A stretch of DNA of 64,000 bases. Source: Histomonas meleagridis 2922-C6/04-290x. Taxonomy: Eukaryota; Protista; Parabasalia. Where the stretch lies: positions 1-64,000 of the forward strand of contig JAANOX010000055.1 in assembly GCA_020184695.1 (NCBI GenBank), written 5' to 3'. Of the stretch, positions 32,019 to 33,981 are shown in pieces. The translations under genes were made by a program, and so were the position numbers. Positions within the stretch are counted from its first letter, which is position 1. Each line of letters starts with the position of its first letter. Below the pieces are notes generated by a model. That model saw only the letters and a list, made by a program, of their open reading frames with translations, made no database searches and had not been told where the DNA came from.

Positions 32019-33636
32019 TAGAGAATCAATTAACGTATATTACAAATTACCATCAAAAGGGTAAATATGATTTGAATAATTTACACAAATTCAGTACCAT
32101 TGAAAAGCTAGCTTTTCATGAAAGGTTTAACGGTCTAACAGAAAAAAATATAGCAAAAAGTGCCAAACATGTATACACGAATAGCACAAAAGAAGATAAA
32201 AAAATGAATTTTAAACTTACCAGAAAGTTAGTAAAAAAATTTTTAACCAATAAAAAAAAAATTTATGAAAAATCACCAAAAAATTATTTCTTTTCATGTT
32301 ACTTTTAGATAAATACCAGGTCTTTTTATTAATTTAACATAACAATCAATTAGTAAATTATTGTATTTTTTGTCAATAAGGTTACTATGTTTCCAATAAG
32401 GTAATACTTTTAATGAAAATATTTGTTTTATTTAAAATTCTAGTAACTCCTTTCCTAAAGTTTTATGATTGTAGTAATATCATTATGTATTCCTTTAAAC
32501 TCAACATGGCTATGTGTCTGTGTTTTTGAATGAAAGTGGCGATAATTTTACATCAGAAATAAGTATAGTTATGCTGTACCACCTGCTAAATTTATAAAAT
32601 AATATTTAGAAATATGTTGATATATGAATTAATTCATTATTTCAAAATACAAAACATTAAACATAAATTAGAGAGAATCATTAAGAACTTTGTTCAACAC
32701 AGGTTGATCTAACAAAAGAATTCACGATAAAACTAAAACCACAGAAAACGAAAAACAAATGCGAAGATTGATTGCAAGTTTCTATGAACATATTATATCA
32801 CTTGAGCAAATGTTTATCACATCTGCTCTTTCAGGGAACTTATTGAAAATGATTATAATCAGTCTATGATAAAAATCAATGAAATAATAGCAATACATGC
32901 TTTCAACAAGTCATTAGCCGAAACAGATCTTATAAAGAAATCAAAAAATGTTATATTCGATAATTTAAAAAACAGAAGACTTATCAAAACAAAGAAGTCG
33001 ATTGCATAGGAAAAGCATAAGGAAAACGCATAATGGAACACAGAAAATTCCGACTGTACTTCTCTCAGTGTGACATATATTCTGTCCAGGCAATCACCAT
33101 CATACATAAGAGTATAAGCTTAACAAAATGCTAATGTAATATATATTTTATGTTACTGTAATAACCTAAAGAAAAATGATTCATCAAATATATAAAACAA
33201 AAGCAAATATATGATATCATGCATAATAAAGTTTATATGTATTTAAATTTGTGATTAAACTTTAATTATTATTAGGGAAAAAAGGAATTCACCAGAAATA
33301 GTATGATGAAAATGTAGAATTCATTTGATTATTTAAAAGAGAAAACAAATCGCAATTTGACCCTAATTAAATAATATAAAAATAATATGAAGTTAGTATA
33401 TAATAATTAAAAAAGAAGTCAGTGTAAAACCAAAAATTTTGTGGAGTTTCGCTTGTGCTCTCGGAAATTTAATAGAACATGATCATAATAAGTCATTTCT
33501 CACTATTGTTATTATATTTTTTCATATCAAACATTACCGTTCAAATATATTTTTCGATTTGATCGAAGAAATGGCATTTTTTTTAATAACTGTTTCTTCG
33601 TAACCACAATTCGAAAGGATCATATCACTTATCAAT

Positions 33637-33981
33637 ATGTCGATGAACATATCTCTCAATATCAATGTTGATGCTAATAAACTAATTGATCAAGTAGCAT
33701 GTGCAACAAATCGTTCATCCATTAATGACCGCTATTTCGACAATGATAATGGAAGGTTTATATCATGCCAATCTGATGGAAAACTCATTGCTGCATGTTT
33801 CCATAAAACGAAAAGTCACTCTGCAACATGTGAAGTTCATAACAACTTCACCAAAAACTTTGGAGTTCCAGATCATATTGTAAGGAGTGCAAAGTCATCT
33901 GCACCAGCAGGTGTTTGGGCTGTTGCTTATTGTGACTCCGGAAAACTCGGAGGAGATAAGACATTCTATAATGTCGACTAA
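33637..33981 (+). CDS. small protein with lactococcin 972-like motif pattern
   Basis: FHKTKSHSATC...SAPAGVWAVA...GGDKTFYN resembles the Lcn972 family pattern (H.T..H.AT...AG.WA.A...N..YWN). Inr TCATATCACT just upstream. The ORF is solid; the family call is tentative. Confidence 0.6.
   Translation: MSMNISLNINVDANKLIDQVACATNRSSINDRYFDNDNGRFISCQSDGKLIAACFHKTKSHSATCEVHNNFTKNFGVPDHIVRSAKSSAPAGVWAVAYCDSGKLGGDKTFYNVD

What the first reader, a model, noticed from the sequence alone, without database searches (positions are those of the whole stretch)
33637..33981. Bacteriocin-like (lactococcin 972 family-like) gene in a protist
The C-terminal ~65 aa show the Lcn972 pattern: aromatic-H-x-T-K-x-H-S-A-T, then R-S..A-P-A-G-V-W-A-x-A, then GG..TFYN. 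Lcn972 binds lipid II and blocks septum synthesis. The gene has its own Inr (TCATATCACT) and lies between eukaryotic genes. There is no classical signal peptide, but a ~30-aa N-terminal extension could be a pro-region. Inference: a co-opted antibacterial effector for shaping or digesting gut bacteria, analogous to the bacterial-derived NlpC/P60 peptidoglycan hydrolases of Trichomonas.
Basis: inference. Interest (0 to 1): 0.75.

Follow-up and report, generated by a model that had tools for sequence, protein, structure and literature searches.

The report
Divergent lactococcin-972-like gene in Histomonas
The poultry gut parasite Histomonas meleagridis carries an intact, conserved gene of the bacterial lactococcin 972 (cell-wall-blocking bacteriocin) family, but the family was already published for trichomonads and this species in 2025, so this is a further, more divergent paralogue and not a new kind of thing.

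Summary
It belongs to the Lactococcin_972 family (PF09683):
- PF09683 is its top Pfam hit but scores below threshold (16.9 vs 22 bits).
- 23 of 24 members of its orthologue alignment (the window protein plus 23 relatives) hit PF09683 at E <= 0.01.
- A profile-profile comparison with a paralogue clade that passes the cut-off gives 97.5% probability (E 7.7e-12).
- The AlphaFold2 model (pLDDT 85.5) matches Lcn972 (2LGN) over all 66 residues at 1.8 A, Z 8.2, and 'Formosin D' (9HKJ) at Z 10.6. The next hit scores 5.8.

The genome is Histomonas meleagridis. The gene lies between clearly eukaryotic genes, has host-like GC, and is under purifying selection.

It is one of three deep paralogue types in this genome: 5 intact and 2 degenerate loci. 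A 2025 MBE paper (PMC12612818) already describes laterally acquired 'AMP-Lcn972' genes in Trichomonas and names H. meleagridis homologues, but in the text held it lists only another paralogue type. This scan also reported the other paralogues on other DNA.

The protein has no signal peptide, and the 'Inr' match is no better than chance. Antibacterial, lipid II-directed action is inferred and untested.

Verdict: new member of a known kind, modest interest.

The parts
33637..33981 (+). Complete CDS (114 aa plus TAA) of a type A Lactococcin_972-family protein of Histomonas meleagridis
   Evidence: ORF. It is single-copy in the genome. The exact protein is seen on 2 contigs in the public collection.
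33637..33747 (+). N-terminal extension (aa 1-37). It is acidic and not hydrophobic. It carries the conserved motif N-x-N-V-D-x-N-x-L-I-D-Q and is predicted as strand 2-5, helix 13-21, strand 26-34.
   Evidence: Conservation in A1 and A2 and in paralogue types C and P0040/44/49/58. AlphaFold2 secondary structure with block pLDDT 89/84/72. pI 4.4 and maximum KD 0.74.
33748..33978 (+). Lcn972 beta-sandwich domain (aa 38-114). It carries H56, H61-S-A-T, R83-S, G92-x-W94-A and G105-G-x-K-x-(F/Y)-Y-N.
   Evidence: 2LGN aligns to model residues 38-114 over 66/66 residues at 1.8 A, 27% identity, Z 8.2. Foldseek gives TM 0.82 normalised to the target. Pfam PF09683 covers aa 55-111. hhalign covers aa 47-113.
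33835..33876 (+). Type A-specific insertion of about 13 aa (roughly aa 67-80, V-H-N-N-F...D-H-I) between two strands. It is absent from type B and from Lcn972.
   Evidence: Gaps in BLASTP, hhalign and HMMER alignments. Lowest-confidence block of the model, pLDDT 63. H68-N-N-F is nearly invariant among orthologues.
33620..33629 (+). TCATATCACT, an Inr-like TCAYW match 15 nt upstream of the ATG. It is not distinguishable from chance.
   Evidence: Sequence. Frequency test: 23% of long ORFs against 18% of random positions.

Best explanation
The ORF is a functional, host-integrated gene of Histomonas meleagridis. It encodes a divergent member ('type A') of the Lactococcin_972 family, which is part of the bacterium-derived AMP-Lcn972 gene family already described in trichomonads and other metamonads.

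Shown: the protein consists of a basic C-terminal Lcn972 beta-sandwich (aa 38-114) and a conserved, acidic, structured N-terminal strand-helix-strand extension (aa 1-37).

Inferred, by homology with Lcn972 (which binds lipid II and blocks septum synthesis; Martinez et al. 2008, cited in PMC12612818): it most likely binds a bacterial cell-wall precursor and inhibits or kills the bacteria that this bacterivorous caecal parasite lives among and feeds on. Eukaryotes lack lipid II, so no immunity gene is needed.

Also inferred: because it has no signal peptide, it must reach bacteria either by non-classical release or inside phagosomes.

My confidence by step: family membership about 0.93; an antibacterial role about 0.5; lipid II as the target about 0.35.
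For: Sequence homology:
- PF09683 is the top Pfam hit (E 0.0097).
- 23 of 24 alignment members hit PF09683, best E 5.2e-6. The 74%-identical orthologue P0008 passes the gathering cut-off (22.9 bits).
- BLASTP to same-genome paralogues P0025 (37.5 bits to PF09683) and P0026 gives 2e-8 and 5e-9 over nearly the full length.
- hhalign of type A against type B gives 97.5% probability, E 7.7e-12.

Structure:
- AlphaFold2 model with pLDDT 85.5 and pTM 0.78.
- The top two matches in the structure searches of the PDB are 9HKJ (Z 10.6) and 2LGN Lcn972 (Z 8.2; 66/66 residues; 1.8 A; 27% identity). The next hit scores Z 5.8.

A real gene under selection:
- pN 0.19 against a saturated pS of 0.755 versus an orthologue.
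- 18 invariant columns across 24 sequences.

A host gene:
- The paralogues are annotated as Histomonas meleagridis.
- Neighbours are Cluap1, a BspA LRR protein and a RhoGEF-Kelch protein.
- Coding GC is 0.367, like the neighbouring genes.

Functional support for the family, from the literature:
- A T. gallinae AMP-Lcn972 is upregulated (log2FC 2.6) in E. coli co-culture.
- Expression of the recombinant domains impairs E. coli growth (PMC12612818).
Against: - The single-sequence Pfam score (16.9 bits) is below the gathering cut-off of 22.
- Sequence profiles A1 and A2 do not reach significance against the 2LGN sequence (no hit, and E 0.19).
- There is no signal peptide and no room for one upstream, so export is unexplained.
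- Type A has a 13-aa insertion and four conserved cysteines (C44, C54, C65, C99). Neither the insertion nor C65 has a counterpart in the printed alignment to Lcn972, so target specificity may differ.
- There are no expression, localisation or activity data for this gene or this paralogue type.
- The published expression evidence concerns another species and, judging by the paper's BLAST table, the type C lineage.
- Lcn972 itself has a very narrow spectrum, restricted to Lactococcus (abstract of PMC9964109).
Confidence: 0.6

Rival explanations
1. The Lcn972 fold has been retained but repurposed. In this reading, type A is an intracellular protein with a non-antibacterial role, for example binding another polyprenyl-pyrophosphate-linked or host/parasite ligand, and it is never delivered to bacteria.
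For: - No signal peptide or hydrophobic N-terminus.
- A structured N-terminal extension, a type-specific insertion and conserved cysteines, none of which were seen in the 2LGN alignments.
- Only 27% identity to Lcn972.
- The whole length of the protein, extension included, is conserved among orthologues.
Against: - The core family motifs (H..HSAT, AGxWA, GxK.YYN) are kept nearly invariant.
- The domain stays basic, like a cationic antimicrobial peptide.
- Relatives in Trichomonas respond to bacteria (PMC12612818), and four of the six Trichomonas AMP-Lcn972s also lack a predicted signal peptide there.
- Conserved cysteines fit an oxidising, extracytosolic destination better than the cytosol (my inference).
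Confidence: 0.25
2. The ORF is a chance open frame or a decaying pseudogene remnant of an old transfer, with no function.
For: The ORF is small (114 aa), the single-sequence Pfam score is below threshold, and two other Lcn972-like loci in the genome are degenerate (C187 and C273).
Against: - There are 23 relatives at 44-78% identity, 17 of them exactly 114 aa long.
- pN 0.19 against a saturated pS of 0.755.
- The model is confident.
- The identical protein is seen on two contigs of the collection.
Confidence: 0.02
3. The gene is bacterial contamination or a misassembled bacterial fragment, not a protist gene.
For: The family is typically bacterial.
Against: - It is embedded in a contig of hundreds of kb between Cluap1/IFT38, BspA-LRR and RhoGEF-Kelch genes.
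- Its GC matches the neighbouring coding DNA.
- Orthologues on metagenome contigs are flanked by protein-kinase and arrestin genes.
- tblastn against 72,556 plasmids finds nothing.
Confidence: 0.01

Closest known systems
AMP-Lcn972 proteins of Trichomonas and other metamonads (Mol Biol Evol 2025, msaf276; PMC12612818)
   Same: - A eukaryotic nuclear gene of bacterial ancestry.
- A short protein with a C-terminal Lac972 domain preceded by an N-terminal extension.
- The motif around two conserved histidines.
- Often no predicted signal peptide.
- H. meleagridis is explicitly named there as having homologues.
   Different: - In the text and supplements held, the paper lists only KAH0788655.1 and XP_067770210.1 for H. 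meleagridis. These are the multi-copy type C paralogue.
- The window gene is a separate deep clade, type A (100/97 support), only 24-28% identical to types C and B.
- Type A has a 13-aa insertion and four conserved cysteines.
- I could not check whether it appears in the paper's Fig. 13, because figures are not held and the window protein's accession is masked.
Lactococcin 972 of Lactococcus (PDB 2LGN; Pfam PF09683)
   Same: - The beta-sandwich fold superposes over all 66 mature residues (1.8 A, 27% identity, Z 8.2).
- Shared motifs include an identical A-G-V-W-A and H-S-A-T.
- The domain is basic.
   Different: - Lcn972 is a plasmid-encoded, Sec-exported 66-aa bacteriocin with linked ABC-type immunity genes (my own knowledge).
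- The window protein has no signal peptide and no such neighbours.
- It has a 37-aa structured N-terminal extension, a 13-aa insertion and conserved cysteines.
- Lipid II binding is untested.
Formosin D (PDB 9HKJ, released 2025-12-17)
   Same: It is the best structural match: Z 10.6, 80 residues at 2.2 A, covering model residues 26-114; Foldseek E 4e-4. It therefore shares one more N-terminal strand with the window protein than Lcn972 does.
   Different: Identity is only 15-18%, and no sequence-level hit was found. No paper on the protein was found in the library, so its origin and function are unknown to me.

Membership tests
Lactococcin_972 family (Pfam PF09683 / InterPro IPR006540) | Statistically supported sequence homology to the Lcn972 domain | tested here: met
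   The window protein alone scores below the operational gathering cut-off (16.9 vs 22 bits, E 0.0097, top hit). Homology is nevertheless established. 23 of 24 alignment members match, best E 5.2e-6. Orthologue P0008 scores 22.9 bits. hhalign to the cut-off-passing type B clade gives 97.5% probability, E 7.7e-12. BLASTP to P0025 and P0026 gives 2e-8 and 5e-9.
Lactococcin_972 family (Pfam PF09683 / InterPro IPR006540) | Lcn972 beta-sandwich fold (2LGN) | tested here: met
   AlphaFold2 model with pLDDT 85.5. 2LGN: Z 8.2, 66/66 residues, 1.8 A. Foldseek TM (target) 0.82, probability 1.00. This is a predicted model, not an experimental structure.
Lactococcin_972 family (Pfam PF09683 / InterPro IPR006540) | Conserved core motifs (H-x4-H-S/T-A-T; A-G-x-W-A; G-x-K-x-Y-Y-N) | tested here: met
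   All are present, and invariant or nearly invariant among orthologues. They align with 2LGN.
Bacterial Lcn972-type bacteriocin system | Sec signal peptide giving a secreted mature peptide of about 66 aa | tested here: not met
   No hydrophobic N-terminus (maximum KD 0.74). An in-frame stop lies 12 codons upstream. All orthologues start at the same methionine.
Bacterial Lcn972-type bacteriocin system | Linked immunity / ABC-transporter genes | tested here: not met
   The neighbours are Cluap1, a BspA LRR protein and a RhoGEF-Kelch protein. This is expected for a eukaryote without lipid II.
Bacterial Lcn972-type bacteriocin system | Lipid II binding and inhibition of septum synthesis | not testable with these tools
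   Needs purified protein and binding and killing assays.
Metamonad AMP-Lcn972 (PMC12612818) | Nuclear gene of a metamonad with a C-terminal Lac972 domain, an N-terminal extension and a two-histidine motif | tested here: met
   Organism identified through the paralogues' annotations. Context. H56 and H61 are invariant. Domain layout.
Metamonad AMP-Lcn972 (PMC12612818) | Induction by bacteria / toxicity to bacteria | not testable with these tools
   Reported only for T. gallinae gAMP1 and for recombinant Trichomonas domains.

The most novel reading that the evidence does not exclude
Type A defines a eukaryote-only, leaderless Lcn972 subfamily. Its features are a structured acidic N-terminal strand-helix module, a 13-aa insertion bearing a nearly invariant H-N-N-F, and four conserved cysteines. 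On this reading it is delivered by a non-classical route (vesicles or phagosomes) and has a target range different from the narrow Lactococcus-specific Lcn972, for example Gram-negative caecal bacteria. Together with the Paramecium homologue, this would make Lcn972-like proteins a general tool of bacterivorous protists and not a metamonad peculiarity.
Probability: 0.2. Interest if true: 0.55.

Novelty: new member of a known kind. Interest (0 to 1): 0.3.

Why it matters
H. meleagridis causes blackhead disease of turkeys and depends on caecal bacteria for growth, so proteins that act on bacteria matter for its biology and for culturing it. This gene adds a third, divergent paralogue lineage to the already published metamonad AMP-Lcn972 toolkit. 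It is a natural variant (insertion, cysteines, leaderless) for asking how Lcn972-type proteins recognise their target and how protists export them. It does not open a new question by itself.

Tried and rejected
- Sequence profiles of the type A clade (A1) and of all three types (A2) against PDB sequences: no hit for A1, and 2LGN only at E 0.19 for A2. The link to 2LGN therefore rests on Pfam, the paralogues and the fold.
- NCBIfam scan: nothing.
- Bacterial outgroup for a rooted tree: not obtained. A scan of 185,579 bacterial and archaeal genomes with type B patterns gave 23 pattern matches, none confirmed. An earlier attempt failed because no stretch was conserved enough. tblastn of P0025 and P0001 against plasmids was blank. 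The question of one transfer or several therefore remains untested here.
- Identifying the source organisms of the metagenome orthologues through flanking genes: the kinase gives only paralogue-level matches (41%), and two other flanking proteins find nothing in the genome. They are eukaryotic, but how closely they are related to Histomonas is unresolved.
- The Inr as evidence of a promoter: rejected as non-discriminating.
- Literature on 'Formosin D': none found.
- The large representative-protein search was deliberately not used, since the family was not left open.

Full report
**Observation.** Window 33637-33981 (+) is an intact ORF, ATG to TAA, of 114 aa.
- The open frame extends only 11 codons upstream of the ATG before a stop. 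There is therefore no hidden N-terminal exon in frame.
- The sequence TCATATCACT is at 33620-33629. However, TCAYW occurs within 30 nt upstream of 6 of 26 long ORFs in this window and at 18% of random positions. It says nothing either way about a promoter.

**Organism and context.**
- The genome (43.1 Mb, 281 contigs) is Histomonas meleagridis. Paralogues elsewhere in the same assembly are deposited as H. meleagridis hypothetical proteins, for example KAH0787819.1/XP_067769820.1 and KAH0793220.1/XP_067770210.1.
- The flanking genes are eukaryotic: Cluap1/IFT38 (276.8 bits) upstream, a BspA-type LRR protein, and a RhoGEF plus Kelch protein downstream.
- GC of the ORF region (0.367) equals that of neighbouring coding DNA.
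- The exact protein is recorded on two contigs, the longer 536,654 bp.
- Contamination is excluded.

**Family membership.**
- hmmscan puts PF09683 (Lactococcin_972) first, but below the gathering score: 16.9 vs 22 bits, E 0.0097.
- A word-based search found 23 relatives at 44-78% identity, 17 of them exactly 114 aa, all from metagenome assemblies.
- In the resulting alignment A1, 23 of 24 members hit PF09683 at E <= 0.01, best 5.2e-6. The 74%-identical orthologue P0008 passes the cut-off (22.9 bits).
- Within the genome, a six-frame PF09683 scan finds further loci:
  - C231, 38.2 bits, a 114-aa ORF, here called 'type B'.
  - Three near-identical copies on C69, C205 and C227, 24.5 bits, 'type C'.
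  - A broken copy on C187 and a truncated one on C273.
- The window protein ('type A') aligns to types B and C over nearly its whole length, at E 2e-8 and 5e-9.
- The profile of type A against a profile of type B gives 97.5% probability, E 7.7e-12.

**Structure.**
- AlphaFold2 on A1 gives a confident model: pLDDT 85.5, pTM 0.78.
- Foldseek against the PDB ranks 9HKJ 'Formosin D' (E 4e-4, TM 0.78 normalised to the target) and 2LGN lactococcin 972 (E 6e-3, TM 0.82, 26% identity) first.
- An exhaustive structural alignment against 48,161 representative chains gives the same two hits:
  - 9HKJ: Z 10.6, 80 residues at 2.2 A, covering model residues 26-114.
  - 2LGN: Z 8.2, all 66 residues at 1.8 A, 27% identity, covering model residues 38-114.
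  - The next hit is at Z 5.8.
- Purely sequence-based profiles did not reach significance against the 2LGN sequence. The weak A2 alignment was nevertheless co-linear and shows the identical A-G-V-W-A and H-S-A-T.
- I conclude that the protein is a genuine, divergent member of the family.

**Is it a working gene?** Against the orthologue on L012, pN is 0.19 while pS is 0.755, which is saturated. Eighteen columns are invariant over 24 sequences. Chance ORF and pseudogene are rejected.

**Anatomy.**
- Residues 1-37 are acidic (pI 4.4) and residues 38-114 are basic (pI 8.8, about +3).
- The N-terminal part is not hydrophobic (maximum 10-aa Kyte-Doolittle mean 0.74) and is therefore not a signal peptide.
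- It is predicted as strand 2-5, helix 13-21 and strand 26-34, with block pLDDT of 89, 84 and 72.
- Its motif N-x-N-V-D-x-N-x-L-I-D-Q recurs in type C and in the related proteins P0040, P0044, P0049 and P0058.
- Type A has a roughly 13-aa insertion (about aa 67-80) with a nearly invariant H-N-N-F. This is the least confident part of the model.
- Four cysteines (44, 54, 65, 99) are conserved in 21-24 of 24 sequences.

**Relationships.** A maximum-likelihood tree of 53 relatives was built. I left out P0017, P0023, P0027-29, P0041, P0055, P0059 and P0062 as fragments or redundant isoforms. The root is at the midpoint only.
- Type A forms a clade with 100/97 support.
- It is sister (98/84) to P0044/P0049/P0058.
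- Type C plus P0045 joins next.
- Type B forms a separate clade (99/98) that includes a Paramecium tetraurelia protein.
- I could not obtain bacterial sequences by reference. One transfer or several therefore remains open.

**What is already known.**
- PMC12612818 (Mol Biol Evol 2025) describes AMP-Lcn972 as the first laterally acquired antimicrobial-peptide gene conserved in Trichomonas, with two paralogues per species.
- It reports predicted structures matching 2LGN, induction of one T. gallinae gene in E. coli co-culture, and growth defects of E. coli expressing the domains.
- In the text and supplements held, only the type C accessions are listed for H. meleagridis.
- Two earlier notes of this scan treat other Lcn972 paralogues of the same genome and reached the same literature.
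What is added here is a third, more divergent paralogue lineage and its features.

**Mechanism.**
- Shown: family, fold, conservation and eukaryotic integration.
[quoted passage not shown] The parasite needs no immunity gene, because eukaryotes lack lipid II.
- Unexplained: export without a signal peptide. Non-classical release or action in phagosomes are the options. The conserved cysteines argue mildly for a non-cytosolic destination (my inference).
- The main rival is a repurposed intracellular protein.

**Verdict.** This is a real feature, correctly recognised. It is a new member of a known kind, of modest interest.

Noticed in passing
G000 C69:325695-325976, C205:402660-402941, C227:102634-102915 (L008-L010); C187:1027-1302 (L007); C273:68990-69073 (L011): The type C Lcn972-like gene occurs in three near-identical intact copies, plus one copy with a stop or frameshift and one truncated fragment. 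Each copy lies next to BspA-like LRR ORFs. Some annotated isoforms (P0027, P0029) begin with a hydrophobic M-F-F-L-I-P-I-I-I-V-A that could be a signal peptide, unlike the window gene.
   Followed up: partly
P0053: A Paramecium tetraurelia macronuclear protein (111 aa, PF09683 precomputed) falls inside the type B clade. The 2025 paper mentions neither Paramecium nor ciliates, so the family may extend beyond metamonads to other bacterivorous protists.
   Followed up: partly
L015:1284-1583 (GCA_024409135.1, JAKSUJ010002281.1): P0049 is named 'MAG: lactococcin 972 family bacteriocin [archaeon]' and is 40% identical to the window protein over its full length. It sits on a 1.7-kb AT-rich contig beside a Myb DNA-binding gene. 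This is probably a protist contig mis-binned into an archaeal MAG.
   Followed up: partly
Genome-contig scan: The type B signature peptides (H-[TS]-A-T-T-x-G-K-L and the G-N-K-x-Y-Y block) gave no confirmed relative in one genome each of 185,579 bacterial and archaeal species. This version of the domain may be confined to eukaryotes.
   Followed up: no
window:34139-35230 (+): The gene immediately downstream encodes a BspA-type LRR protein (PF13306, 98.4 bits) with a hydrophobic C-terminal segment, as is typical of trichomonad surface BspA proteins. BspA-like ORFs also flank the type C Lcn972 copies.
   Followed up: no
L012-L014 (ENA ERZ27291652, ERZ920287, ERZ27291650): Type A orthologues (74% identity) lie on very AT-rich metagenome contigs beside protein-kinase and arrestin-domain genes. 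The other flanking proteins have no match in the H. meleagridis genome. The source organism is eukaryotic but unidentified.
   Followed up: partly
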